A stretch of DNA of 64,000 nucleotides, from positions 213,280,001 through 213,344,000 of the forward strand of contig NC_091288.1 in assembly GCF_032444005.1 (NCBI RefSeq). The letters are read 5' to 3'. Shown piece after piece: positions 24,898-43,942 of the stretch. The DNA is from Ranitomeya imitator. Lineage: Eukaryota. The position numbers and the translations under genes are program-made. Under the pieces are notes generated by a model that worked only from the letters and a program-made list of their open reading frames with translations, was not told the DNA's origin and searched no databases. Within the stretch, counting starts at the first letter, position 1. Every line of letters starts with the position of its first letter.

Positions 24898-27800
24898 TCA
24901 TCGCTGGATCTTCTGCCTCTTAGGAGGATTTTCTTCCTCATCGTCTGAGAACTCCAGGAGTTTGGGGCACAGTTGTTGGGCTACTTTCCAAGTCCACAGA
25001 CATAGTTCCACACGGTGAGGCGTCCATTCTTCATCCGAGGCTGCAACACACATCGTCTCAGATTATTGGTACTGAAAGAAGATCCTAATCCTGTACGGAT
25101 CCTGAGTTACCTCCTGTATTATACTCCAGAGCTGCACTCACTATTCTGCTGGTGCAGTCACTGTGTACATACATTACTGATCCTGAGTTACATCCTGTAT
25201 TATACCCCAGAGCTGCACTCACTATTCTGCTGGTGCAGTCACTGTGTACATACATTACATTACTGATCCTGAGTTACCTCCTGTATTATACTCCAGAGCT
25301 GCACTCACTATTCTGCTGGTGCAGTCACTGTGTACATACATTACATTACTGATCCTGAGTTACCTCCTGTATTATACCCCAGAGCTGCACTCACTATTCT
25401 GCCGGTGCAGTCACTGTGTACATACATTACATTACTGATCCTGAGTTACATCCTGTATTATACCCCAGAGCTGCACTCACTATTCTGCTGGTGCAGTCAC
25501 TGTGTACATACATTACATTACTGATCCTGAGTTACCTCCTGTATTATACCCCAGAGCTGCACTCACTATTCTGCCGGTGCAGTCACTGCGTACATATATT
25601 ACTGATCCTGTGTTACATCTTGTATTATACCCCAGAGCTGCATTCACTATTCTGCTGGAGCAGTCACTGTGTACATACATTACTGATCCTGAGTTACATT
25701 CTGTATTATACCCCAGAGCTGCACTCACTATTCTGCTGGTGCAGTCACTGTGTACATACATTACATTACTGATCCTGAGTTACATCCTGTATTATATCCC
25801 AGAGCTGCACTCACTATTCTGCTGGTGCAGTCACTGTGTACATACATTACATTACTGATCCTGAGTTACATCCTGTATTATACCCCAGAGCTGCACTCAC
25901 TATTCTGCTGGTGCAGTCACTGTGTACATACATTACATTACTGATCCTGAGTTACAGCCTGTATTATACTCCAGAGCTGCACTCACTATTCTGCTGGTGC
26001 AGTCACTGTGTACATACATTACATTACTGATCCTGAGTTACCTCCTGTATTATACTCCAGAGCTGCACTCACTATTCTGCTGGTGCAGTCACTGTGTACA
26101 TACATTACATTACTGATCCTGAGTTACATTCTGTATTATACCCCAGAGCTGCACTCACTATTCTGCTGGTGCAGTCACTGTGTACATACATTACATTACT
26201 GATCCTGAGTTACATCCTGCATTATACCCCAGAGCAGCACTCACTATTCTGCTGGTGCAGTCACTGTGTACATAAATTACTGATCCTGAGTTACCTCCTG
26301 TATTATACCCCAGAGCTGCACTCACTATTCTGCTGGTGCAGTCACTGTGTACATACATTACATTACTGATCCTGAGTTACAGCCTGTATTATACTCCAGA
26401 GCTGCACTCACTATTCTGCTGGTGCAGTCACTGTGTAACATAGTAACATAGTTAGTAAGGCCGAAAAAAGACATTTGTCCATCCAGTTCAGCCTATATTC
26501 CATCATAATAAATCCCCAGATCTACGTCCTTCTACAGAACCTAATAATTGTATGATACAATATTGTTCTGCTCCAGGAAGACATCCAGGCCTCTCTTGAA
26601 CCCCTCGACTGAGTTCGCCATCACCACCTCCTCAGGCAAGCAATTCCAGATTCTCACTGCCCTAACAGTAAAGAATCCTCTTCTATGTTGGTGGAAAAAC
26701 CTTCTCTCCTCCAGACGCAAAGAATACCCCCTTGTGCCCGTCACCTTCCTTGGTATAAACAGATCCTCAGCGAGATATTTGTATTGTCCCCTTATATACT
26801 TATACATGGTTATTAGATCGCCCCTCAGTCGTCTTTTTTCTAGACTAAATAATCCTAATTTCGCTAATCTATCTGGGTATTGTAGTTCTCCCATCCCCTT
26901 TATTAATTTTGTTGCCCTCCTTTGTACTCTCTCTAGTTCCATTATATCCTTCCTGAGCACCGGTGCCCAAAACTGGACACAGTACTCCATGTGCGGTCTA
27001 ACTAGGGATAATGTACATACATTACATTACTGATCCTGGGTTACATCCTGTATTATACCCTAGAGCTGCACTCACTATTCTGCTGGTGCAGTCACTGTGC
27101 ACATACATTACAATACTGATCCTGAGTTACCTCCTGTATTATACTCCAGAGCTGCACTCACTATTCTGCTGGTGCAGTCACTGTGTACATACATTACAAT
27201 ACTGATCCTGAGTTACCTCCTGTATTATACTCCAGAGCTGCACTCACTATTCTGCTGGTGCAGTCACTGTGCACATACATTACAATACTGATCCTGAGTT
27301 ACCTCCTGTATTATACTCCAGAGCTGTACTCACTATTCTGCTGGTGCAGTCACTGTGTACATACATTACAATACTGATCCTGAGTTACCTCCTGTATTAT
27401 ACTCCAGAGCTGCACTCACTATTCTGCTGGTGCAGTCACTGTGTGCATACATTACATTACTGATCCTGAGTTCCATCCTGTATTATACCCCAGAGCTGCA
27501 CTCACTATTCTGCTGGTGCAGTCACTGTGTACATACATTACATTACTGATCCTGAGTTACATCCTGTATTATACTCCAGAGCTGCAATCACTATTCTGCT
27601 GGTGCAGTCACTGTGTACATACATTACTGATCCTGAGTTACCTCCTGTATTATACTCCGGAGCTGCAATCACTATTCTGCTGGTGCAGTCACTGTGTACA
27701 TACATTACATTACTGATCCTGAGTTACATCCTGTATTATACCCCAGAGCTGCAATCACTATTCTGCTGGTGCAGTCACTGTGTACATACATTACTGATCC

Positions 27801-30800
27801 TGAGTTACCTCCTGTATTATACTCCGGAGCTGCACTCACTGTGTACACACATTACTGTTACACTCCGGAGCTGCACTCACTGTGTACATACATTACTGTT
27901 ACACTCCGGAGCTGCGCTCACTGTGTACATACATTTCTGTTACACTCCGGAGCTGCACTCACTGTGTACATACATTACTGTTACACTCCGGAGCTGCTCT
28001 CACTGTGTACATACATTACTGTAACACTCCGGAGCTGCGCTCACTGTGTACATACATTACTGTTACACTCCGGAGCTGCGCTGTGTACATACATTACTGT
28101 AACACTCCGGAGATGCACTCACTGTGTCCATACATTACTGTTACACTCCGGAGCTGCGCTCACTGTGTCCATACATTACTGTTACACTCCGGAGCTACAC
28201 TCACTGTGTACATACATTCCTGTTACACTCCGGAGCTGCACTCACTGTGTACATACATTACTGTAACACTCCGGAGCTGCGCTCACTGTGTACATACATT
28301 ACTGTTACACTCCGGAGCTGCGCTCACTGTGTCCATACATTACTGTTACACTCCGGAGCTACACTCACTGTGTCCATACATTACTGTTACACTCCGGAGA
28401 TGCACTCACTGTGTACATACATTACTGTTACACTCCGGAGCTGCACTCACTGTGTCCATACATTACTGTTACACTCCGGAGCTGCGCTCACTGTGTCCAT
28501 ACATTACTGTTACACTCCGGAGCTGCGCTCACTGTGTCCATACATTACTGTTACACTCCGGAGCTGCACTCACTGTGTACATACATTCCTGTTACACTCC
28601 GGAGCTGCACTCACTGTGTACATACATTCCTGTTACACTCCGGAGCTGCACTCACTGTGTACATACATTACTGTTACACTCCGGAGCTGCGCTCACTGTG
28701 TACATACATTCCTGTTACACTCCGGAGGTGCACTCACTGTGTCCATACATTCCTGTTACACTCCGGAGGTGCACTCACTGTGTCCATACATTACTGTTAC
28801 ACTCCGGAGCTGCACTCACTGTGTACATACATTACTGTTACACTCCGGAGCTGCACTCACTGTGTACATACATTACTGTTACACTCCGGAGCTGCACTCA
28901 CTGTGTCCATACATTACTGTTACACTCCGGAGCTGCTCTCACTGTGTACATACATTACTGTAACACTCCGGAGCTGCGCTCACTGTGTCCATACATTACT
29001 GTTACACTCCGGAGCTGCGCTCACTGTGTCCATACATTACTGTTACACTCCGGAGCTGCGCTCACTGTGTCCATACATTACTGTTACACTCCGGAGCTGC
29101 GCTCACTGTGTACATACATTACTGTAACACTCCGGAGATGCACTCACTGTGTACATACATTACTGTTACACTCCGGAGCTGCGCTCACTGTGTCCATACA
29201 TTACTGTTACACTCCGGAGATGCACTCACTGTGTACATACATTACTGTTACACTCCGGAGCTGCACTCACTGTGTCCATACATTACTGTTACACTCCGGA
29301 GCTGCTCTCACTGTGTACATACATTACTGTAACACTCCGGAGCTGCGCTCACTGTGTCCATACATTACTGTTACACTCCGGAGCTGCGCTCACTGTGTCC
29401 ATACATTACTGTTACACTCCGGAGCTGCGCTCACTGTGTCCATACATTACTGTTACACTCCGGAGCTGCACTCACTGTGTACATACATTCCTGTTACACT
29501 CCGGAGCTGCACTCACTGTGTACATACATTCCTGTTACACTCCGGAGCTGCACTCACTGTGTACATACATTACTGTTACACTCCGGAGCTGCGCTCACTG
29601 TGTACATACATTCCTGTTACACTCCGGAGGTGCACTCACTGTGTACATACATTACTGTTACACTCCGGAGCTGCGCACATACATTACTGTTACACTCCGG
29701 AGCTGCACTCACTGTGTACATACATTCCTGTTACACTCCGGAGCTGCTCTCACTGTGTACATACATTACTGTTACACTCCGGAGCTGCGCTCACTGTGTA
29801 CATACATTACTGTTACACTCCGGAGCTGCGCTCACTGTGTACATACATTACTGTTACACTCCGGAGATGCACTCACTGTGTCCATACATTACTGTTACAC
29901 TCCGGAGCTACACTCACTGTGTCCATACATTACTGTTACACTCCGGAGCTGCACTCACTGTGTACATACATTCCTGTTACACTTCGGAGCTACACTCACT
30001 GTGTACCTACATTACTGTTACACTCCGGAGCTGCGCTCACTGTGTCCATACATTACTGTTACACTCCGGAGCTGCGCTCACTGTGTCCATACATTACTGT
30101 TACACTCCGGAGCTGCGCTCACTGTGTACATACATTACTGTTACACTCCGGAGCTGCGCTGTGTACATACATTACTGTAACACTCCGGAGCTGCGCTCAC
30201 TGTGTCCATACATTACTGTTACACTCCGGAGCTGCACTCACTGTGTACATACATTACTGTTACACTCCGGAGCTGCACTCACTGTGTACATACATTACTG
30301 TTACACTCCGGAGCTGCGCTGTGTACATACATTCCTGTTACACTCCGGAGCTGCGCTCACTGTGTACATACATTACTGTTACACTCCGGAGCTGCGCTCA
30401 CTGTGTACATACATTACTGTTACACTCCGGAGCTGTGCTCACTGTGTACATACATTACTGTTACACTCCGGAGCTGCGCTCACTGTGTACATACATTACT
30501 GTTACACTCCGGAGCTGCACTCACTGTGTACATACATTACTGTTACACTCCGGAGCTGCACTCACTGTGTACATACATTCCTGTTACACTTCGGAGCTAC
30601 ACTCACTGTGTACCTACATTACTGTTACACTCCGGAGCTGCACTCACTGTGTACATACATTACTGTTACACTCCGGAGCTGCACTCACTGTGTACATACA
30701 TTCCTGTTACACTCCGGAGCTGCACTCACTGTGTCCATACATTCCTGTTACACTCCGGAGCTGCACTCACTGTGTACATACATTCCTGTTACACTCCGGA

Positions 30801-32722
30801 GCTGCACTCACTGTGTACATACATTACTGTTACACTCCGGAGCTGCACTCACTGTGTACATACATTACTGTTACACTCCGGAGCTGCTCTCACTGTGTAC
30901 ATACATTACTGTTACACTCCGGAGCTGCGCTGTGTCCATACATTACTGTTACACTCCGGAGCTGCGCTCACTGTGTCCATACATTCCTGTTACACTCCGG
31001 AGCTGCGCTCACTGTGTCCATACATTACTGTTACACTCCGGAGCTGCTCTCACTGTGTCCATACATTCCTGTTACACTCCGGAGCTGCACTCACTGTGTC
31101 CATACATTCCTGTTACACTCCGGAGCTGCACTCACTGTGTACATACATTCCTGTTACACTCCGGAGCTGCACTCACTGTGTACATACATTACTGTTACAC
31201 TCCGGAGCTGCACTCACTGTGTACATACATTACTGTTACACTCCGGAGCTGCTCTCACTGTGTACATACATTACTGTTACACTCCGGAGCTGCGCTGTGT
31301 CCATACATTACTGTTACACTCCGGAGCTGCGCTCACTGTGTCCATACATTCCTGTTACACTCCGGAGCTGCGCTCACTGTGTCCATACATTACTGTTACA
31401 CTCCGGAGCTGCTCTCACTGTGTCCATACATTCCTGTTACACTCCGGAGCTGCACTCACTGTGTCCATACATTACTGTTACACTCCGGAGCTGCTCTCAC
31501 TGTGTCCATACATTCCTGTTACACTCCGGAGCTGCACTCACTGTGTCCATACATTACTGTTACACTCCGGAGCTGCTCTCACTGTGTCCATACATTCCTG
31601 TTACACTCCGGAGCTGCGCTCACTGTGTCCATACATTACTGTTACACTCCGGAGCTGCGCTCACTGTGTCCATACATTCCTGTTACACTCCGGAGCTGCA
31701 CTCACTGTGTACATACATTACTGTTACACTCCGGAGCTGCACTCACTGTGTACATACATTACTGTTACACTCCAGAGCTGCGCTCACTGTGTCCATACAT
31801 TACTGTTACACTCCGGAGCTGCGCTCACTGTGTCCATATATTACTGTTACACTCCGGAGCTGCGCTCACTGTGTCCATACATTCCTGTTACACTCCGGAG
31901 CTGCGCTCACCGTTGCTCAGGGCCTCGGCCTTCCGCTGCAGCGCCCCCAGGTACCTCAGGTAGTGCTTGGCGTTGTACTGCACAGGTGACAGGCCCGGGA
32001 CGCTCTCCACGGCTTCGTCTGCCATGAACGCCGCCATGTCCGGGGCGCCGGCTGACAGCACCGCTGGATTTGGGGGGGAAGGCAGAGGATTCTCAGTCAC
32101 ACCACGGTGGCACCGGGCTAACGTCACCATGGTAACCGCGGTGGGCGGGCCGCACTCACCGGACGCCGTGGCCGGGCCGACGCCCTTCAGCTGGCACAGC
32201 TCCTGGATGGCGGCGGACACGTCTGGCAGCAGCAGGAAGGCTCTCCCGGAGCAGCGCTCCACCGCACCCGCCGAGTTACACGACACCAGCTGCTTCAGGC
32301 GCGGACGAAACTTCCCCCTCTGCCGGACACAAAGGGGAAACCATGAGCGTCCTTAAAGGGGCGGTCACTCACCATGGCGACCGTGGGAAGAGGCCGGCGC
32401 TCACCGTCAGCTTCCACTCCATCAGCTTCTCCAGCTCCTCCAGCGTCAGGGACCTGTGCGGGCGAGCGGCCATGGCGGCCGGCAGCTCCTCCCGACACCT
32501 GCGCACATAACACAACCTTGTTATTTTTAACTCTTTCCCTCCGCAGCCATTCTTTTTGTGACTGACCCCCACGATGGCCGCCGCCGCCTCTCACCATTTC
32601 TCCAGCTCCAGGAGACGCTTCTGCTTCGCCGCCTTCGCCGCCACCACCTCCCAGTACACGGCGGACACGCGCTGCCACTTTTTCGGATCGCTGCAGTGGT
32701 AAAGGTCGGACCCGGAAGCCAT
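24898..32722 (-). CDS. Uncharacterised 225-aa helix-hairpin-helix (HhH-GPD-like) putative DNA glycosylase, probably nuclear (Amun-like family, from recall)
   Basis: Exons 32722-32595, 32498-32405, 32319-32160, 32063-31911 and 25040-24898 (678 nt). All introns are GT-AG, phases are consistent, and the start context is AAAATGG. Protein: MASGSDLYHCSDPKKWQRVSAVYWEVVAAKAAKQKRLLELEKWCREELPAAMAARPHRSLTLEELEKLMEWKLTRGKFRPRLKQLVSCNSAGAVERCSGRAFLLLPDVSAAIQELCQLKGVGPATASAVLSAGAPDMAAFMADEAVESVPGLSPVQYNAKHYLRYLGALQRKAEALSNASDEEWTPHRVELCLWTWKVAQQLCPKLLEFSDDEEENPPKRQKIQR. It contains the HhH motif LKGVGPATA and an NLS-like PPKRQK. Confidence 0.9.
25097..27830. repeat. 86-bp satellite (81-bp variants) in intron 4 of the HhH gene
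   Basis: Unit GATCCTGAGTTACCTCCTGTATTATACTCCAGAGCTGCACTCACTATTCTGCTGGTGCAGTCACTGTGTACATACATTACATTACT. ORF starts recur every 86 nt. Interrupted by a CR1 fragment. Confidence 0.95.
26438..27011 (-). mobile_element. 5'-truncated CR1-clade LINE (ORF2 C-terminus, 3' UTR and ACTATGTT tail)
   Basis: ORF 26541-26990 (EYCVQFWAP..KDIMELERVQRRATKLI..LGLFSLEKRRLRGDLITMYK..FFTVRAVRIWNCLP) is the typical CR1 ORF2 end. The short repeated tail lies at 26438-26455, and TGTA flanks both junctions. Confidence 0.92.
27826..31910. repeat. 41-bp satellite (CTCACTGTGTACATACATTACTGTTACACTCCGGAGCTGCA), about 100 units
   Basis: Direct periodicity. It abuts exon 4 of the HhH gene with no spacer and is a deletion derivative of the 86-bp unit. 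Confidence 0.97.
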
Positions 32723-33380
32723 TTTTGGTGGGATTTTTCTTTATTCACAGTAACAATAAGAAAAAAAATGTGGGAAAAAAAGGTAGAAAAACAATCACAA
32801 GATTATCCTGCGAGACAATGTCGCTAAGAATCTGCATAATCGGCGCCTCAATAGTGAAACCCCTGATGTTTACCTAATACTGCGCCACAGCAGCGTAGTC
32901 GGAAAAGTAAAGGGGAATTTTTTTTTTTTTTTTAAATAAAAAAAATGACGAATAACCGATTCCCCTGCACGTCCACACACAGAGCAGCCGCCTGTCACCG
33001 GCAAGGTCCTTCTCCCGCGCTCCTGAGCTGGCTCCTTAGTTTGGTTGGGTCACATGACTGCGTTCCAGCTCAGCTTTGCGTTCCACAAGAGGCCGAATGC
33101 TGATTGGCGTCTCCTGTTGCTTGTTTAGAAATCTGACCAATCAAAGACGAAGTAAGTCTAAACGCCAGAGGTTGCGCATTGCGAGCAAAAATTGTCGCCT
33201 TCTCCAAGGTCATTTTTGTTCAGACATTTTACCTATTGTTTTACGGATTATTTGCTCTACGACAAAATGGCCGCAACTGTACAAAGCACTGTTGTAAACG
33301 AGGACACGAATGTCAATGTTGTCAAATACGCTGTGTCAGTCGGCGGATGCCCCGGAAGTTCCGGCTGGAGGTTGTAGGTT
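32723..33380. promoter_or_regulatory. Putative CpG-rich bidirectional promoter (HhH gene / STUB1)
   Basis: Lies between divergent genes. Opposed CCAAT boxes (ATTGG 33103-33107, CCAAT 33137-33141), YY1-like AAAATGGCCGC (33264-33274) and ETS/GABP CCGGAAGT (33352-33359). Transcription start sites are not determinable from sequence. Confidence 0.65.
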
Positions 33381-34434: not shown

Positions 34435-37400
34435 ATGAAGGGGAAGGAGGAGAGCGGGAGCGGCGGAGGTCGTCTATCTGGAGTCAGCGGCAGTCCGGGG
34501 GGCATTGGGGGGAGTCCAGAGAAGAGTGTCAGTGCCCAGGAGCTGAAGGAACAGGGCAACAGGCTGTTCGTAGCCAGAAAATACCAAGAAGCAGTTTCCT
34601 GCTACAGCAAAGCCATCGTAAGTGTCCACACAAGGAAAATACTCTGTGCTGCTGTGAGACCAGTATATGTGACCACTGACACCCACTTCTCATATGACAC
34701 CATCCTGTCCTCATCATGGTCACACGGGAATGGTCCCGACTTCACATTATCAATACCCTCACTCCCTGTAACACTCTGTGCTGCCGGGGACCCTCAGGAC
34801 ACCCCCTCTGTCATGTGCAGCCTTATCCTCCACATCATACACCTCTGCTGTAACACTCTGTGCTGCTGGGGACCCTCAGGACACCCCCCTCTGTCATGTG
34901 CAGCCTTATCCTCCACATCATACACCTCTGCTGTAACACTCTGTGCTGCTGGGGACCCTAAGGACACCCCCTCTGTCATGTGCAGCCTTATCCTCCACAT
35001 CATACACCTCTGCTGTAACACTCTGTGCTGCTGGGGACCCTCAGGACACCCCCTCTGTCATGTGCAGCCTTATCCTCCACATCATACACCTCTGCTGTAA
35101 CGCTCTGTGCTGCTGGGGACCCTCAGGACACCCCATCTGTCATGTGCAGCCTTATCCTCCACATTATACACCTCTGCTGTAACACTCTGTGCTGCTGGGG
35201 ACTCTCAGGACACCCCCTCTGTCATGTGCAGCGTTATCCTCTACATCATACACCTCTGCTGTAACACTCTGTGCTGCTGGGGACCCTCAGGACACCCCCT
35301 CTGTCATGTGCAGCCTTATCCTCCACATCATACACCTCTGCTGTAACACTCTGTGCTGCTGGGGACCCTAAGGACACCCCCTCTGTCATGTGCAGCCTTA
35401 TCCTCCACATCATACACCTCTGCTGTAACACTCTGTGCTGCTGGGGACCCTCAGGACACCCCCTCTGTCATGTGCAGCCTTATCCTCCACATCATACACC
35501 TCTGCTGTAACACTCTGTGCTGCTGGGGACCCTCAGGACACCCCCTCTGTCATGTGCAGCCTTATCCTCCACATCAAACACCTCTGCTGTAACACTCTGT
35601 GCTGCTGGGGACCCTCAGGACACCCCCTCTGTCATGTGCAGCCTTATCCTCCACATCATACACCTCTGCTGTAACACTCTGTGCTGCTGGGGACCCTCAG
35701 GACACCCCCTCTGTCATGTGCAGCCTTATCCTCCACATCAAACACCTCTGCTGTAACACTCTGTGCTGCTGGGGACCCTCAGGACACCCCCTCTGTCATG
35801 TGCAGCGTTATCCTCTACATCATACACCTCTGCTGTAACACTCTGTGCTGCTGGGGACCCTCAGGACACCCCCTCTGTCATGTGCAGCCTTATCCTCCAC
35901 ATTATACACCTCTGCTGTAACACTCTGTGCTGCTGGGGACCCTCAGGACACCCCATCTGTCATGTGCAGCCTTATCCTCCACATCTTACACCTCTGCTGT
36001 AACACTCTGTGCTGCCGGGGACCCTCAGGACACCCCCCTCTGTCATGTGCAGCCTTATCCTCCACATCATACACCTCTGCTGTAACACTCTGTGCTGCTG
36101 GGGACCCTAAGGACACCCCCTCTGTCATGTGCAGCCTTATCCTCCACATCATACACCTCTGCTGTAACACTCTGTGCTGCTGGGGACCCTCAGGACACCC
36201 CCTCTGTCATGTGCAGCCTTATCCTCCACATCATACACCTCTGCTGTAACACTCTGTGCTGCTGGGGACCCTCAGGACACCCCCTCTGTCATGTGCAGCC
36301 TTATCCTCCACATTATACACCTCTGCTGTAACACTCTGTGCTGCTGGGGACCCTAAGGACACCCCCTCTGTCATGTGCAGCCTTATCCTCCACATCATAC
36401 ACCTCTGCTGTAACACTCTGTGCTGCTGGGGACCCTCAGGACACCCCCTCTGTCATGTGCAGCCTTATCCTCCACATCATACACCTCTGCTGTAACACTC
36501 TGTGCTGCTGGGGACCCTAAGGACACCCCCTCTGTCATGTGCAGCCTTATCCTCCACATCATACACCTCTGCTGTAACACTCTGTGCTGCTGGGGACCCT
36601 CAGGACACCCCCTCTGTCATGTGCAGCCTTATCCTCCACATCATACACCTCTGCTGTAACACTCTGTGCTGCTGGGGACCCTCAGGACACCCCCTCTGTC
36701 ATGTGCAGCCTTATCCTCCACATCATACACCTCTGCTGTAACACTCTGTGCTGCCGGGGACCCTCAGGACACCCCCCTCTGTCATGTGCAGCCTTATCCT
36801 CCACATCAAACACCTCTGCTGTAACACTCTGTGCTGCTGGGGACCCTCAGGACACCCCCTCTGTCATGTGCAGCCTTATCCTCCACATCATACACCTCTG
36901 CTGTAACACTCTGTGCTGCTGGGGACCCTCAGGACACCCCCTCTGTCATGTGCAGCCTTATCCTCCACATCAAACACCTCTGCTGTAACACTCTGTGCTG
37001 CTGGGGACCCTCAGGACACCCCCTCTGTCATGTGCAGCGTTATCCTCTACATCATACACCTCTGCTGTAACACTCTGTGCTGCTGGGGACCCTCAGGACA
37101 CCCCCTCTGTCATGTGCAGCCTTATCCTCCACATTATACACCTCTGCTGTAACACTCTGTGCTGCTGGGGACCCTCAGGACACCCCATCTGTCATGTGCA
37201 GCCTTATCCTCCACATCTTACACCTCTGCTGTAACACTCTGTGCTGCTGGGGACCCTCAGGACACCCCCTCTGTCATGTGCAGCCTTATCCTCTACATCA
37301 TACACCTCTGCTGTAACACTCTGTGCTGCTGGGGACCCTCAGGACACCCCCTCCGTCATGTGCAGCCTTATCCTCCACATCATACACCTCTGCTGTAACA

Positions 37401-40400
37401 CTCTGTGCTGATGGGGACCCTCAGGACACCCCCCTCTGTCATGTGCAGCCTTATCCTCTACATCATACACCTCTGCTGTAACACTCTGTGCTGATGGGGA
37501 CCCTCCGTACACCCCCCTCTGTCATGTGCAGCCTTATCCTCCACATTATACACCTCTGCTGTAACACTCTGTGCTGCTGGGGACTCTCAGGACACCCCCT
37601 CTGTCATGTGCAGCGTTATCCTCTACATCATACACCTCTGCTGTAACACTCTGTGCTGCTGGGGACCCTCAGGACACCCCCTCTGTCATGTGCAGCCTTA
37701 TCCTCCACATTATACACCTCTGCTGTAACACTCTGTGCTGCTGGGGACTCTCAGGACACCCCCTCTGTCATGTGCAGCCTTATCCTCCACATTATACACC
37801 TCTGCTGTAACACTCTGTGCTGCTGGGGACCCTCAGGACACCCCCTCTGTCATGTGCAGCCTCATCTGTCACATTATCTTGATTTTGTGCTGAAATCCTC
37901 TGCGCTGCTGTGTCGGTTCTGATTTCTTTCTCTGTGCACTGTTCAGACCCGGAACCCCTCCATCGCGGTGTACTACACCAACCGCGCGCTGTGCTACCTG
38001 AAGATGCAGCAGCTGGACAAGGCGCTGGCGGACTGTAAGCACGCGCTGGAGCTGGACTGCCAGTCCGTCAAGGCGCACTTCTTCCTGGGGCAGTGCCAGA
38101 TGGAGATGGAGAACTACGACGAGGCCATCGCCAACCTGCAGAGAGGTGCGAGCCCAGCGGGCAGGAGGGAGAATTCCAATAATCCGGAATCTTGACAATC
38201 CCTTTAAATTACTGTTATAGTGATAAAAGCTTCCATACGTGTAGTTGTAGGAAAATAAATTATCTGGAAACCATCAGCAAGCAGGTCGATTGCTGCCAAG
38301 AAGCCTGATCAGTGTCTCCCCTATGGAGATGAGATCCGGCCATACTTGCTGATGGTTTCCACAGTAAATTTGACGCTAATGGTCTGTTTTCCGCAGCGTA
38401 CAGTCTGGCCAAGGAGCAGAGGCTGAACTTCGGAGACGACATCCCCAGCGCCTTGCGGATCGCCAAGAAGAAGCGGTGGAACAACATCGAGGAGCGGAGG
38501 ATCAACCAGGAGAACGAGCTGCACGCCTATCTCACCAAGCTGATCCTGGTGGAGAAGGAGAGGTGAGGAGCCGCCATCGCATGCACCGCCCTGTGCAGCG
38601 CCCCCCGCCGCCGATCACCCCTATAACCCTTTAGATGCCGCCTCCGACCTCTCGCCTGTTTCCACTTCACAGGGAGCTGGAAGAGACGAAGAGGAAACAC
38701 GAGGAGGAGAACGTGGAGGAGACCCGGAGCCGGGTCCAGCTGTCCGGAGTGGCCACCAAGCACGTAAGTCCCAGGGTGTACAGACGTCTGCCCCTCCCCC
38801 CCTGCACTGCGGAGCGCGCGGACCTGATTACGTGGCATGGGGTTAAACATTAATGAAGGTCGGAGGATAGACCTGCGTGTACCTGGTACGAGACAGGCGG
38901 CGGGCAACGCGCTCAGCGGTGCATATGAATACAGGCTATTGTTCACTGTTATCAGCCATTCTCTACACTGCTGCCCTTCTCGATTAGTGGTGTATATAAT
39001 ACAGGCTATTGTTCCCTGTTATCAGCCATTCTCTACACTGCAGCTCCTCTCTATTCTCTGACTCCCTGTGAACCCAGATAGTGCAAAATTACAGAGTTTC
39101 ACCCTTCCACTGACTTTCCGGGATTAAAGTAGCTGCAACTTCGGGGCTTCCAGGGCCGACTACGCCCCAACGGTGTCACCCCTTTTTGGCGGTCACCCAC
39201 AGAGAAGAGGTAACAACAAGCTTAGGGAAGCAGACAGTCCATTGAGGTACATGGCCAGGTGACCAGAGGGTCACAACCTGGCTTCTCCGAACATCTCCAT
39301 GGGGTCAGTTGACCGGATGGTCCCAATTCTGGCTTACTGAAACGTATCTATGGCTGCATAGTTCATCCTTCTCTGTTTTGCAGGTCAGCAAACCAGGTGG
39401 ACTTATACAATGGGTAATCAACATATTAGCAAACATGTATTCTTCAACATCCCTGTCCTCTAAAGATAGCAATACAATAAACGGTAGGAGCTGATATAAG
39501 TCAACTGTGACTCGTATGACAACAGTCTATGGTTCTTGACCCACTGAAGAAAAACACATAAATTCAATAGTCAACATTCAGACAGTAGCCTATGCCTCAT
39601 GGGCGACTGAAAATAGACATCTGGCCTAATTAAGATTGAATGCTGTGTTGTCACATTACTCCCCCATCTTGATTAGCCAGACATGATGGGATTATACTCA
39701 CCCTTCTCCTGGTCCTCGGCCTGACCTGGGTAACTTCTCATGTAATTGACGTGTCATTGTGTCCACACATGGCGTGCTCCGCATCCCGATTCCTGTATCA
39801 AATCCGACCGAGTGTTGGTGGTCTTGTATTCGAGCCGTCGAAGCAAGCACAACTCCTGTAGTTGAGTTTCCCGTTGAGGCTTTATATCCTCTCTGATCTT
39901 CTTCTCAAGGCTGAACTGGTGGGGTTAGATATATTGGTGTTTGAAACCTGCTGAGCATGCCTCACCTATGGTCTGTGTGTATGCCTCGCTGGTTGAGGAG
40001 CCCTTGGACAGTGTCTACAAACACCAGTCTTCTGCAGCTTCTCCGGGCTGAATAGTATCCCACTGCTGCAACAAAATGTGGAGACACGGGGGTCAGTGGG
40101 TGCTCACGTCCGCAGGCCCGAGAACGCATAGACCAGGGCTCATCCCACCACTCTCCTTTTCTGTGGGCAAAATACTACTCGGACAACACAGGGTGAGGGG
40201 AAAACAGCGTGGCAATACTTTATTGAACCACCAAACGGACAATAACACATAGAACAGTCCAAGAAAATAACCCAAGATGGCGCACACATTGAGTCGCCAG
40301 GATTAGAGCAGCTGGGACTTCTGGGCTTCCAGGGCTGACTACCCTACCTACTGCACCCCACTTTTGGCGGATGCCCACAGAGAGGAGGTGTCGACAAGCT

Positions 40401-43400
40401 TAGGAAGCTGACCATCCATTGAAGCACGTGGCCAGGTGACCTTAGGGTCACAACCTGGCCTCTCTGAACATCTCCGTGGGGCCAGGTGACCGGAGCGTCT
40501 CAATCCTGGCTTCCCAAAATGTCTCCATAGATTTAGTGATAGTCAATGGAGCAGATCTGTATCCTCCCAGCTAGTGCCATGGTGCTTAAGCTGGCATCCT
40601 GTAGAATGTCAAATGTGTTCCCCTTGATGATGCCTTGATTGTTCTGTAGAGAGACTTGGTGTCCTGGCAGCTGTTCTGCAGAGTCCCTCTTGATGGGGCC
40701 ATGGTGTTTTGCAGCTGTTCTGCAGAGTCCCTCTTGATGGGGCCATGGTGTTTTGCAGCTGTTCTGCAGAGTCCCTCTTGATGGGGCCATGGTGTTTTGC
40801 AGCTGTTCTGCAGAGTCCCTCTTGATGGGGCCATGGTGTTTTGCAGCTGTTCTGCAGAGTCCCTCTTGATGGGGCCATAGTGTTTTGCAGCTGTTCTGCA
40901 GAGTCCCTCTTGATGGGGCCATGGTGTCCTGGCAGCTGTTCTGCCGAATCTCTCTTGATGGGGCCATGGTGTCCCGGCAGCTGTTCTGCAGAGTCCCTCT
41001 TGATGGTGCCATGGTGTTATGCAGCTGTTCTGCAGAGTCCCTCTTGATGGGGCCATGGTGTCCCGGCAGCTGTTCTGCAGAATCCCTCTTGATGGGGCCA
41101 TGGTGTCCCGGCAGCTGTTCTGCAGAGTCCCTCTTGATGGGGCCATGGTGTCCTGGCAGCTGTTCTGCAGAGTCCCTCTTGATGGCGCCATGGTGTTTTG
41201 CAGCTGTTCTGCAGAGTCCCTCTTGATGGGGCCATGGTGTCCCGGCAGCTGTTCTGCAGAGTCCCTCTTGATGGGGCCATGGTGTCCTGGCAGCTGTTCT
41301 GCAGAGTCCCTCTTGATGGGGCCATGGTGTCCCGGCAGCTGTTCTGCAGAGTCCCTCTTGATGGTGCCATGATGTTATGCAGCTGTTCTGCAGAGTCCCT
41401 CTTGATGGGGCCATGGTGTCCCGGCAGCTGTTCTGCAGAATCCCTCTTGATGGGGCCATGGTGTCCCGGCAGCTGTTCTGCAGAGTCCCTCTTGATGGGG
41501 CCATGGTGTTTTGCAGCTGTTCTGCAGAGTCCCTCTTGATGGTGCCATGGTGTTATGCAGCTGTTCTGCAGAGTCCCTCTTGATGGGGCCATGGTGTCCC
41601 GGCAGCTGTTCTGCAGAATCCCTCTTGATGGGGCCATGGTGTCCCGGCAGCTGTTCTGCAGAGTCCCTCTTGATGGGGCCATGGTGTCCTGGCAGCTGTT
41701 CTGCAGAGTCCCTCTTGATGGCGCCATGGTGTTTTGCAGCTGATCTGCAGAGTCCCTCTTGATGGGGCCATGGTGTCCCGGCAGCTGTTCTGCAGAGTCC
41801 CTCTTGATGGGGCCATGATGTCCCGGCAGCTGTTCTGCAGAGTCCCTCTTGATGGGGCCATGGTGTCCTGGCAGCTGTTCTGCAGAGTCCCTCTTGATGG
41901 GGCCATGGTGTCCCGGCAGCTGTTCTGCAGAGTCCCTCTTGATGGTGCCATGATGTTATGCAGCTGTTCTGCAGAGTCCCTCTTGATGGGGCCATGGTGT
42001 CCCGGCAGCTGTTCTGCAGAATCCCTCTTGATGGGGCCATGGTGTCCCGGCAGCTGTTCTGCAGAGTCCCTCTTGATGGGGCCATGGTGTCCCGGCAGCT
42101 GTTCTGCAGAGTCCCTCTTGATGGGGCCATGGTGTCCCGGCAGCTGTTCTGCAGAGTCCCTCTTGATGGGGCCATGGTGTCCCGGCAGCTGTTCTGCAGA
42201 GTCCCTCTTGATGGGGCCATGGTGTCCCGGCAGCTGTTCTGCAGAGTCCCTCTTGATGGGGCCATGGTGTCCTGGCAGCTGTTCTGCAGAGTCCCTCTTG
42301 ATGGGGCCATGGTGTCCCGGCAGCTGTTCTGCAGAGTCCCTCTTGATGGTGCCATGATGTTATGCAGCTGTTCTGCAGAGTCCCTCTTGATGGGGCCATG
42401 GTGTCCCGGCAGCTGTTCTGCAGAATCCCTCTTGATGGGGCCATGGTGTCCCGGCAGCTGTTCTGCAGAGTCCCTCTTGATGGGGCCATGGTGTCCCGGC
42501 AGCTGTTCTGCAGAGTCCCTCTTGATGGGGCCATGGTGTCCCGGCAGCTGTTCTGCAGAGTCCCTCTTGATGGGGCCATGGTGTCCCGGCAGCTGTTCTG
42601 CAGAGTCCCTCTTGATGGGGCCATGGTGTCCCGGCAGCTGTTCTGCAGAGTCCCTCTTGATGGGGCCATGGTGTCCCGGCAGCTGTTCTGCAGAGTCCCT
42701 CTTGATGGGGCCATGGTGTCCCGGCAGCTGTTCTGCAGAGTCCCTCTTGATGGGGCCATGGTGTCCCGGCAGCTGTTCTGCAGAGTCCCTCTTGATGGGG
42801 CCATGGTGTCCCGGCAGCTGTTCTGCAGAGTCCCTCTTGATGGGGCCATGGTGTCCCGGCAGCTGTTCTGCAGAGTCCCTCTTGATGGGGACATGGTGTC
42901 CCGGCAGCTGTTCTGCAGAGTCCCTCTTGATGGGGCCATGGTGTCCCGGCAGCTGTTCTGCAGAGTCCCTCTTCATGCGGCCATGGTGTCCCGGCAGCTG
43001 TTCTGTAGATTGTTCCTGGAAACAGAGGCAGATCACCTTTTATAGTTCACAGCTCTTATTAAATCATTTCTCCACAGGATTGGGGGAACTTGGCATGAGA
43101 TAATTTCGCATTGTTGGAGGGTTCATAGTTTATGCTTCAGTGTTTGAGGGTCAACAAACTGCATGGCCCGGTACAATGGGTAATCAACATATTATCAAAC
43201 ATCGATTGTTCAATGTCCCTGTCCTCCAAAGATGGCAGACAATAACCTCTAGGCGCTGATATAAGAGGTAAACAGCAGCCATTCACAAACCTCAATTCAA
43301 GAATTAACTTTTACGAACAATAGTCTGTGTTTATTGACCAACTGAAGAAAAACAGAAATTCAACAGTCAACGTTGAACCAATAGCCTATGTCTCCTGGCT

Positions 43401-43942
43401 TAATTATGATTAATTGCTGTGTTGTCACACTCCCCTTTCTTTTGTGAGCAGGACAAACATTTGGCAGAAATGGACGAACTCTTCTCCCAAGTGGATGAGA
43501 GACGTAAGGTGAGATCCCGAGGGCTGGGAGGCCGGCGGCCATGTTGGTTGACCCCACCTTCCCAGCTCGCCCCATTGTCACTCACCCCATTGTTTCTCTT
43601 TGTGACTAGAAGCGAGACATCCCGGACTACCTCTGCGGGAAGATCAGCTTTGAGCTGATGCGGGAGCCGTGTATAACCCCCAGCGGAATCACCTACGACA
43701 GGAAGGACATCGAGGAGCACCTCCAGGTAAGAGGGATGATGGGGGGGGGGATGAACCGGGGTCAGCGTGGACCCCCCCACTTCCTGACTGATGGTAAATC
43801 ATCTATTTTCCTGCAGAGAGTGGGACACTTTGATCCGGTGACCCGGAGCCCCCTGACCCAGGATCAGCTGATCCCGAACCTCGCCATGAAGGAGGTGATC
43901 GACGCCTTCATATCGGAGAACGGTTGGGTGGAGGACTATTAG
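34435..43942 (+). CDS. STUB1: E3 ubiquitin-protein ligase CHIP (TPR + U-box), 312 aa
   Basis: Exons 34435-34617, 37947-38145, 38397-38562, 38673-38763, 43452-43508, 43610-43726 and 43817-43942 (TAG), 939 nt, GT-AG, in phase. [86 protein letters not shown] matches CHIP. An acceptor at 34371-34372 suggests an upstream non-coding exon. Confidence 0.98.
34766..37870. repeat. 82-bp satellite in the first coding intron of STUB1, about 38 units
   Basis: ORF starts recur every 82 nt (34943, 35025, 35107...). Unit CTGTAACACTCTGTGCTGCTGGGGACCCTCAGGACACCCCCTCTGTCATGTGCAGCCTTATCCTCCACATCATACACCTCTG. Confidence 0.97.
39790..40295 (-). mobile_element. Decayed LTR-retrotransposon 5' fragment (LTR end, primer-binding site, start of gag)
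   Basis: Minus strand: AATAAA in an LTR-like segment, a ..CA end at 40077, then the PBS-like TTTTGTTGCAGCAGTGGGAT (40076-40057), then [23 protein letters not shown], which resembles Gypsy gag N-termini. Confidence 0.5.
40655..43010. repeat. 45-bp (44/45) satellite GAGTCCCTCTTGATGGGGCCATGGTGTCCCGGCAGCTGTTCTGCA in STUB1 intron 4
   Basis: About 52 units. Degenerate proto-units at 40570-40655. Confidence 0.97.

What the first reader, a model, noticed from the sequence alone, without database searches (positions are those of the whole stretch)
32017..32190. Active-site signature predicts a monofunctional glycosylase
Seen: G-P-A124-T-A, then F-M-A-D143-E. Established: bifunctional HhH-GPD enzymes have a catalytic Lys at the hairpin position and an Asp 18-19 residues later (EndoIII K120/D138, OGG1 K249/D268). 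Monofunctional enzymes such as MutY and AlkA lack the Lys but keep the Asp. Here Ala replaces Lys and the Asp sits at +19, the OGG1 spacing. No Fe-S cysteine cluster is evident. Inference: base excision without AP-lyase activity, with D143 catalytic.
Basis: partly seen in the sequence, partly recalled or inferred. Interest (0 to 1): 0.7.

Follow-up and report, generated by a model that had tools for sequence, protein, structure and literature searches.

The report
Frog Amun-type glycosylase-like gene, no lysine
The stretch encodes the DNA-binding hairpin and the conserved aspartate of a small, expressed frog protein that is the vertebrate counterpart of the fly nuclear protein Amun; it has the fold of DNA-repair glycosylases but, like its whole family, lacks the lysine needed to cut the DNA backbone, and no enzyme activity has been shown.

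Summary
G-P-A124-T-A (codons 32178-32164) and F-M-A-D143-E (32028-32014) lie on the minus strand in exons 3 and 4. They belong to an intact, spliced, expressed 5-exon gene of 225 aa in a Ranitomeya poison frog. The 96-nt intron 3 lies inside the reported range.

The protein is not an orphan. It is 40% identical over 195 aa to Drosophila Amun, which papers call a nuclear regulator with a glycosylase domain. The family is large and spans eukaryotes and some bacteria: 2719 cluster representatives at E<=1e-3.

An AlphaFold model (pLDDT 94.6) matches only HhH-GPD superfamily structures. The best match is the Ogg2 enzyme TM1821 (Z 10.2). OGG1, MutY, EndoIII, Mag1 and AlkA score Z 4-7.

Across 184 homologues no sequence has a Lys anywhere in the hairpin. 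Position 143 is Asp in 172 of 179, and position 144 is Glu in 177 of 179. No Cys is conserved.

Catalysis and the absence of lyase activity remain untested. Two other lysines (K72, K77) are highly conserved, and I could not place them in 3D.

Verdict: a new vertebrate member of a known but biochemically uncharacterised kind. The scan has noted this only on this same window.

The parts
32595..32722 (-). Exon 1 (ATG at 32722-32720), residues 1-43
   Evidence: Splice-site enumeration against P0001; spliced contigs in 4 runs join 32595 to 32498 (joint reported with cut +3)
32405..32498 (-). Exon 2, residues 43-74, includes the family-wide W71-K72
32160..32319 (-). Exon 3, residues 75-128: the R-G-K77-F-R-P loop and the helix-hairpin-helix L-K-G-V-G-P-A124-T-A-S
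   Evidence: Pfam HHH PF00633 24.6 bits against a cut-off of 24 on the orthologue P0001
32064..32159 (-). Intron 3 (96 nt, GT..AG), inside the finding's range; it is an open frame, so it reads through as a false 32-residue insert
   Evidence: skipped in contigs of all four runs
31911..32063 (-). Exon 4, residues 128-179: the Gly/Pro loop A-G133-A-P135, F-M-A-D143-E144, Y157, Y162
32170..32172 (-). Codon of A124, at the hairpin position that holds the Schiff-base Lys in bifunctional HhH-GPD enzymes
32014..32019 (-). Codons of D143 and E144, the near-invariant acidic pair at the N-terminus of helix 143-147
25041..31910 (-). Intron 4 (6870 nt), filled by a 41-bp satellite (27817-31910, about 100 copies) and an 86-bp satellite (25094-27840)
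   Evidence: the contigs' loose ends at 31911 read on into the exon 5 sequence
24898..25040 (-). Exon 5, residues 179-225 plus stop: the last helices (W-T-P-H...L-W) and an acidic then basic tail (K-R-Q-K), NLS-like
   Evidence: the tail is modelled with low confidence

Best explanation
The stretch encodes the catalytic-centre motifs of a 225-aa frog orthologue of Drosophila Amun. The Amun family is a distinct branch of the HhH-GPD DNA-glycosylase superfamily. It is found across eukaryotes and in some bacteria, and its fold is closest to the small Ogg2 enzymes. Shown here: the gene is intact, spliced and transcribed; the fold assignment; the family-wide absence of a hairpin Lys; and the near-invariance of Asp143-Glu144 at the canonical Asp site. 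Inferred: the hairpin G120-V-G122 binds the DNA backbone and a nucleotide is flipped into the cleft between the two helical domains. D143, perhaps with E144, would then promote hydrolysis of the N-glycosidic bond. Without an amine at position 124 the product would be an intact abasic site passed to an AP endonuclease. That would make it a monofunctional glycosylase of unknown substrate. The R-G-K-F-R-P loop 45 residues upstream may be the DNA wedge or phosphate clamp.
For: Gene: five exons, all GT-AG, 225 aa. Spliced contigs in four runs from four studies confirm introns 1-3 and the exon 4 to exon 5 junction. Family: 40% identity over 195 aa, E 4e-36, to the Amun protein of the D. melanogaster subgroup; relatives in many flies and ticks are named Amun. 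The profile finds 2719 representatives at E<=1e-3, from animals, a plant, an oomycete, algae and a foraminifer. It also finds 35-41% identical genes in Gemmatimonadota and Chloroflexota genomes. Fold: model pLDDT 94.6, pTM 0.89, all five models above 93. VIA-align against 48,161 chains: TM1821 Ogg2 Z 10.2, 169 aa, 4.2 A. The next 20 rows are all HhH-GPD superfamily at Z 4.9-6.8. The earlier shallower model agrees, and the three Ogg2 structures score Z 9.3-10.1. Active site: A124 aligns with the EndoIII Lys, and the hairpin is identical to that of a MutY-type enzyme. No K occurs at positions 120-128 in 184 sequences. D143 is conserved in 172/179 and E144 in 177/179. Bacterial members keep G-V-G-P-A-T-A-S and F-F-D-E. 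No Cys is conserved. The Lys-plus-Asp rule for bifunctional OGG enzymes is stated in PMC3397491.
Against: No activity has been reported for any family member in the papers I could search. Amun is described only as a nuclear transcriptional regulator with a glycosylase domain. Sequence matches to solved glycosylases are limited to the hairpin, and Pfam HhH-GPD (PF00730) does not match at all. Z of 10 with rmsd 4 A is a distant match for an all-helical protein, and Foldseek E-values are only 0.04. The Asp of this fold also caps a helix, so its conservation may be structural. I had no model coordinates, so the pocket, the orientation of D143 and the positions of the conserved K72 and K77 are unknown. 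HhH-GPD folds with other jobs also appear among the matches.
Confidence: 0.55

Rival explanations
1. A non-catalytic DNA or chromatin binder (pseudo-enzyme). The glycosylase fold would only recognise DNA structures or abasic sites, and the protein would act as a transcriptional regulator, as proposed for fly Amun.
For: Amun is described as a nuclear transcriptional regulator in the Notch pathway and co-purifies with Rad50 and chromatin factors. No enzymatic activity is reported. The inactive homologue S. pombe Mag2 is among the structural matches at Z 6.5. The Asp may be conserved as a helix cap.
Against: From my own knowledge, Mag2 has lost the catalytic Asp. This family keeps Asp-Glu in 172-177 of 179 sequences, from bacteria to vertebrates, which is more than a structural cap usually requires. 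Bacterial members have no Notch-type regulation to serve.
Confidence: 0.25
2. An enzyme with this fold that does not act on a DNA base lesion. It could be a nucleotide or nucleoside hydrolase like the queuosine salvage enzyme Qng1 (DUF2419), or a base-modifying transferase like phage gp46.
For: Qng1 (7u07, 7ugk; Z 5.2-5.5) and gp46 PUGT (8z2m; Z 4.7-5.0) appear among the matches. The substrate is unknown, and no conserved gene neighbourhood in bacteria points to repair.
Against: These matches score below about fifteen true DNA glycosylases. The canonical DNA-binding hairpin passes the Pfam threshold and is the best-conserved part of the family. The animal proteins carry NLS-like tails, and fly Amun is described as nuclear.
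Confidence: 0.12
3. A bifunctional glycosylase/lyase that uses a lysine outside the hairpin (K72 or K77) as the Schiff-base nucleophile.
For: K72 is present in 162/172 sequences, bacteria included, and K77 in 155/176. Their position relative to D143 could not be measured.
Against: Every bifunctional HhH-GPD enzyme I know of uses the hairpin Lys (own knowledge; for the OGG enzymes, PMC3397491). K77 is Val in the bacterial members. K119 is often Arg, which suggests phosphate contact rather than a nucleophile.
Confidence: 0.06

Closest known systems
Drosophila Amun (CG2446; Shalaby et al. 2009, Genetics 182:1061)
   Same: Homologous over the whole globular domain (40% identity, 195 aa, E 4e-36). 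It has the same R-G-K-F motif, hairpin, P-F-M-A-D-E, Y-T, and W-x-P-H...L-W motifs, and the hairpin Lys is also absent (G-V-G-T-T-M-A in flies).
   Different: Insect proteins are 300-590 aa with a long low-complexity tail, whereas the vertebrate protein is the bare 225-aa domain plus a short tail. Fly genetics (Notch modifier, bristle development) has no tested counterpart in vertebrates. The original paper was not available here.
Ogg2 8-oxoguanine glycosylase/lyases (TM1821 3n0u, MjaOgg 3knt, SsoOgg 3fhg)
   Same: Best structural matches, Z 9.3-10.2 over 156-169 residues. They have the same size, the same two helical domains without the OGG1 A-domain, no Fe-S cluster, and an Asp after the hairpin.
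   Different: Ogg2 enzymes have the hairpin Lys and a strictly conserved C-terminal Lys that senses 8-oxoG (PMC3397491). The frog protein has Ala at the hairpin position and a disordered acidic/basic tail. Sequence identity is only 14-18%, and there is no significant sequence match.
MutY-type and AlkA/Mag-type monofunctional HhH-GPD glycosylases
   Same: No hairpin Lys, and the Asp is kept. A clusterless MutYX (8uuc) has the same G-I-G-P-A-T-A hairpin. Structural Z is 6-7 for MutY, Mag1 and D. radiodurans AlkA.
   Different: There is no MutY C-terminal domain, no Fe-S cluster and no AlkA N-terminal domain. The acidic pair D-E and the R-G-K-F-R-P loop are specific to the Amun family.
Pfam PF21790 (OGG-like, putative) and PF19827 (DUF6308)
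   Same: These are the only non-hairpin Pfam matches. PF21790 matches nearly full length in one alga (13-188 of the protein to 15-200 of 201, E 1.4e-3). DUF6308 matches 14 of 66 members.
   Different: All matches are below the curated cut-offs, so the Amun family has no Pfam model of its own in this library.

Membership tests
HhH-GPD DNA glycosylase superfamily | Helix-hairpin-helix motif with a Gly-hydrophobic-Gly hairpin | tested here: met
   PF00633 scores 24.6 bits (cut-off 24) on P0001 and matches 57 of 66 family members at E<=1. Helices 108-115 and 123-133 flank L-K-G-V-G.
HhH-GPD DNA glycosylase superfamily | Gly/Pro-rich loop followed by a conserved Asp about 18-20 residues after the hairpin | tested here: met
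   A-G133-A-P135...D143. P135 is conserved in 157/174 and D143 in 172/179. The spacing is 19 in 144 sequences and 18 in 23.
HhH-GPD DNA glycosylase superfamily | Two-domain all-helical fold shared with EndoIII, MutY, OGG and AlkA | tested here: met
   The top 21 of 48,161 chains are all of this superfamily, Z 4.9-10.2. The result is the same with an independent shallower model.
HhH-GPD DNA glycosylase superfamily | Match to the Pfam HhH-GPD domain model PF00730 | tested here: not met
   No hit, even at E<=10 for P0001 or E<=1 for the 66 members.
HhH-GPD DNA glycosylase superfamily | N-glycosidic bond cleavage | not testable with these tools
   A biochemical assay is needed; none was found in the literature searched.
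Bifunctional glycosylase/lyases (EndoIII, OGG1, Ogg2) | Lys at the hairpin position as Schiff-base nucleophile | tested here: not met
   Ala124. No Lys occurs at positions 120-128 in any of 184 sequences.
Ogg2 | Strictly conserved C-terminal Lys at the chain end acting as 8-oxoG sensor (PMC3397491) | tested here: not met
   The structural alignment ends at model residue 200. Residues 205-225 are an acidic then basic tail modelled with low confidence.
Amun family | Significant full-domain sequence similarity to Drosophila Amun | tested here: met
   E 4e-36, 40% identity over 195 aa. The vertebrate profile hits a fly Amun at 8e-52.
Amun family | Nuclear localisation | not tested
   Only an NLS-like K-R-Q-K / K-K-x-K-T-K tail is seen in vertebrate members.
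MutY / EndoIII Fe-S subfamily | Four-Cys [4Fe-4S] cluster loop | tested here: not met
   No Cys column reaches 50% conservation.

The most novel reading that the evidence does not exclude
The Amun family is a catalytically active, strictly monofunctional N-glycosylase clade with an Asp-Glu catalytic pair and a still unknown, possibly regulatory or epigenetic, base substrate. It would be conserved from Gemmatimonadota to vertebrates and would explain Amun's developmental phenotypes through base excision. It is present as a coding gene in frogs, reptiles, fish and marsupials, while the syntenic locus carries a non-coding label (STUB1-DT / LINC02867) in the names given to marsupial orthologues.
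Probability: 0.25. Interest if true: 0.7.

Novelty: new member of a known kind. Interest (0 to 1): 0.4.

Why it matters
Vertebrate base excision repair is usually described with a fixed set of glycosylases. This gene is an additional protein of the same fold, under strong constraint at the canonical active-site positions. It is present in most vertebrate classes and across eukaryotes, yet no substrate is known for it. Linking the unnamed vertebrate genes (zebrafish zgc:112496 and the frog LOC entries) to fly Amun and to the Ogg2-like fold gives a concrete, testable hypothesis: monofunctional base excision dependent on D143/E144. It also offers tractable models in Xenopus, zebrafish and Drosophila. 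The prediction itself is a standard inference from known rules, and the 'putative glycosylase domain' of Amun has been in the literature since 2009.

Tried and rejected
- **Sequence searches against solved structures.** A single protein and two profiles matched only the hairpin, so no residue-level alignment to Ogg2 was obtained.
- **Family libraries.** Pfam and NCBIfam have no family model for this protein; only hairpin motifs and sub-threshold OGG-like and DUF6308 hits appeared.
- **Foldseek.** Only weak E-values (0.04-0.05); the fold call rests on VIA-align.
- **ESM Atlas.** Both routes were closed.
- **Model coordinates.** They are not exposed. I could not test pocket shape, D143 orientation, superposition on OGG1/AlkA/MBD4 residue by residue, or distances from K72 and K77. 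MBD4 never appeared in any match list.
- **The original Amun paper.** Not held by PMC id or PubMed id, nor was Faucher 2009 on Ogg2. What I say about the 2009 paper beyond searches is from memory.
- **Bacterial gene neighbourhoods.** In 29 loci no neighbour was conserved in more than 3 loci, apart from overlapping spurious ORFs, so there is no functional hint.
- **Ogg2 membership.** Rejected because the hairpin Lys and the C-terminal Lys are both missing.
- **Human sequence.** None was examined or searched. The statement about the human locus rests only on the names given to marsupial orthologues.

Full report
**Observation.** On the minus strand the window reads L118-K-G-V-G-P-A124-T-A-S at 32190-32161 and F140-M-A-D143-E144 at 32028-32014. 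The two motifs sit in different exons. A 96-nt intron (32159-32064, GT..AG) lies inside the reported range. It is an open frame, so one mechanical ORF of 132 codons spans both motifs.

**The gene.** I enumerated splice sites against the orthologue of Ranitomeya variabilis (P0001). This gives five exons on the minus strand:
- exon 1: 32722-32595
- exon 2: 32498-32405
- exon 3: 32319-32160
- exon 4: 32063-31911
- exon 5: 25040-24898

All introns are GT-AG, and the product is 225 aa. It differs from P0001 at 15 positions, none of them in a conserved motif. Intron 4 is 6870 nt long and is filled by a 41-bp and an 86-bp satellite.

Contigs from four public runs in four studies carry the spliced form. 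Introns 1, 2 and 3 are skipped exactly as predicted. At 31911 the contigs continue into the exon 5 sequence. The runs are only guessed to be RNA, but spliced contigs of 1.3-1.5 kb are transcripts. The gene is therefore real and expressed, and it is spliced across the satellite-filled intron.

**Family.** The word search found about 225-aa 'uncharacterized' proteins in many frogs, crocodilians, lizards, a skate and cyprinid fish (zgc:112496). The window is closest to Ranitomeya imitator (99% over the part annotated there). A 27-sequence vertebrate alignment has these invariant motifs: G-K-F-R-P, L-K-x-x-G-P-A-T-A-S, A-F-M-A-D-E-A-V-E-S and K-H-Y.

A profile search of 1.84 billion cluster representatives gave 2719 hits at E<=1e-3 and 1617 at E<=1e-10. 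Cluster names show these groups:
- ticks, labelled 'protein amun'
- Drosophila and mosquitoes
- an ostracod, a coral, an annelid, molluscs, a crinoid and a rotifer
- an ichthyosporean, a sundew, an oomycete, a prasinophyte and a foraminifer
- marsupials, a shrew and a reindeer

The Drosophila relatives are named Amun in many species. The frog-type protein is 40% identical to the Amun of the D. melanogaster subgroup over 195 residues (E 4e-36). Bacterial genomes also hold full-length relatives at 35-41% identity. They are mostly Gemmatimonadota, Longimicrobia and Chloroflexota, including two complete chromosomes. These keep G-V-G-P-A-T-A-S and F-F-D-E.

[quoted passage not shown] It is also called a genetic repressor of Notch signalling that co-purifies with Rad50 (PMC13076223). 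The founding paper (Shalaby 2009) is cited there but was not readable here. I found no report of enzymatic activity.

**Fold.** Sequence methods see only the hairpin. Pfam HHH is just over threshold. PF00730 does not match. PF21790 (OGG-like) and DUF6308 give faint hits. PDB sequence searches find only ComEA, EndoIII and MutY hairpins.

A first AlphaFold model from 27 sequences had pLDDT 86, but its five models were uneven. A second model from 66 diverse sequences had pLDDT 94.6 and pTM 0.89, with all five models above 93. Both are all-helical, and D143 opens the short helix 143-147 after the Gly/Pro loop.

VIA-align against 48,161 chains gave TM1821 (an Ogg2 enzyme) at Z 10.2, with 169 residues aligned at 4.2 A. 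The next twenty rows all belong to the HhH-GPD superfamily at Z 4.9-6.8: Mag1, EndoIII, OGG1, AlkA, MutY, NTHL1, MagIII, AGOG, MIG, MUTYH, Qng1 and gp46 (same picture). Among Foldseek's candidates the three Ogg2 structures stand about 3 Z units above the rest. Foldseek's own E-values are weak (0.04-0.05).

The tool warns that Z near 10 can be trivial for helical proteins. Here three things make the superfamily assignment firm:
- the match list contains only one superfamily
- the alignments cover nearly the full length
- the hairpin motif is in register

Ogg2 membership fails, however. The hairpin Lys and the strictly conserved C-terminal Lys that define that group (PMC3397491) are both absent.

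**Active-site columns.** In 184 homologues aligned to the family profile:

| Position | Residues observed |
|---|---|
| 124 | A 160, T 9 (flies), S 3, Q 3, G 2; never K |
| 120-128 | no Lys in any sequence |
| 143 | D 172, E 5, N 1, C 1 |
| 144 | E 177 of 179 |

The 124-to-143 spacing is 19 residues in 144 sequences and 18 in 23. A profile alignment to Deinococcus EndoIII-1 places A124 on the Lys of 'G-V-G-V-K-T-A-S'. A clusterless MutY-type enzyme has the same 'G-I-G-P-A-T-A' hairpin. No Cys is conserved.

**Caveats.**
- The Asp of this fold also caps a helix, so its conservation alone does not prove catalysis.
- K72 (94%, bacteria included) and K77 (88%, Val in bacteria) are conserved lysines.
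- Folds of this kind also serve other chemistry (Qng1, gp46) or no chemistry (Mag2). All of these appear among the matches.
- Bacterial gene neighbourhoods give no hint.

**Mechanism proposed.** Shown: the fold, the hairpin, the missing Lys, the conserved Asp-Glu pair, and expression. Inferred:
- backbone binding by the hairpin
- nucleotide flipping into the interdomain cleft
- hydrolysis of the glycosidic bond promoted by D143, perhaps with E144
- release of an intact abasic site
- the R-G-K-F-R-P loop acting as wedge or clamp, by analogy with the wedge loops of OGG1 and EndoIII (recalled from memory, so a lead only)

I give this reading about 0.55. The rivals are a non-catalytic binder or regulator (0.25), another substrate or chemistry (0.12), and a lyase using another Lys (0.06).

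**Context.** A TPR plus U-box gene (the STUB1/CHIP architecture) lies head to head on the plus strand from about 34435 to 43939. Opossum orthologues of the frog protein are named 'STUB1-DT' and 'LINC02867' by their sources. This suggests that the syntenic human locus is annotated as non-coding. I did not look at any human sequence. The reindeer protein has D143E, and one shrew isoform lacks the hairpin, which may mean relaxed constraint in placentals; I did not test this.

**Verdict.** The gene is a vertebrate member of the already named Amun family within the HhH-GPD superfamily. The monofunctional prediction is reasonable, holds family-wide and is testable, but it is unproven and only modestly novel. 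The scan's other notes on this gene are all on this same window.

Noticed in passing
window 25094-31910: Intron 4 of the gene consists almost entirely of two tandem arrays: a 41-bp unit in about 100 copies (27817-31910) that abuts the exon 4 splice donor at 31910, and an 86-bp unit (25094-27840). Transcripts are nevertheless spliced correctly from 31911 to exon 5.
   Followed up: partly
window 34435-43939 (+): A STUB1/CHIP-like gene (TPR repeats, then a U-box, Pfam E 3e-29) lies head to head with the Amun-like gene, about 1.7 kb between the start codons. Its introns also hold long tandem arrays (about 34900-37900 and 40800-43100).
   Followed up: partly
window 32770-32873 (-): Transcript contigs from three runs skip a 104-nt 5'UTR intron whose ends in this assembly read GT..AC on the gene's strand, a non-canonical acceptor after a good pyrimidine tract. 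A fourth run places the joint one base away with two extra letters, next to a T run.
   Followed up: no
window 32064-32130 (-) / P0002: The GenBank product of Ranitomeya imitator (P0002, 120 aa) starts with 22 residues that are a translation of intron 3. That public gene model is therefore truncated and mis-started, and the true protein has 225 aa.
   Followed up: partly
P0045, P0145, P0042, P0333: Marsupials keep an intact orthologue, named STUB1-DT / LINC02867 by its sources. The reindeer protein has Glu in place of D143, and a shrew isoform lacks the hairpin. This may be decay of the gene in placental mammals.
   Followed up: no
L001-L035 (bacterial loci): Gemmatimonadota, Longimicrobia and Chloroflexota genomes encode 190-205-aa proteins that are 35-41% identical to the frog protein, which is unusually close for a bacterium-vertebrate pair. 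No neighbouring genes are conserved. L036 and L037 (50-52% identity, in MAGs labelled bacterial) look like eukaryotic contamination.
   Followed up: partly
window 32224 and 32641: Transcript contigs differ from the window at two coding sites. 32224 is synonymous (P106) in all four runs. 32641 (in two runs) gives A28T, the residue found in R. variabilis.
   Followed up: no
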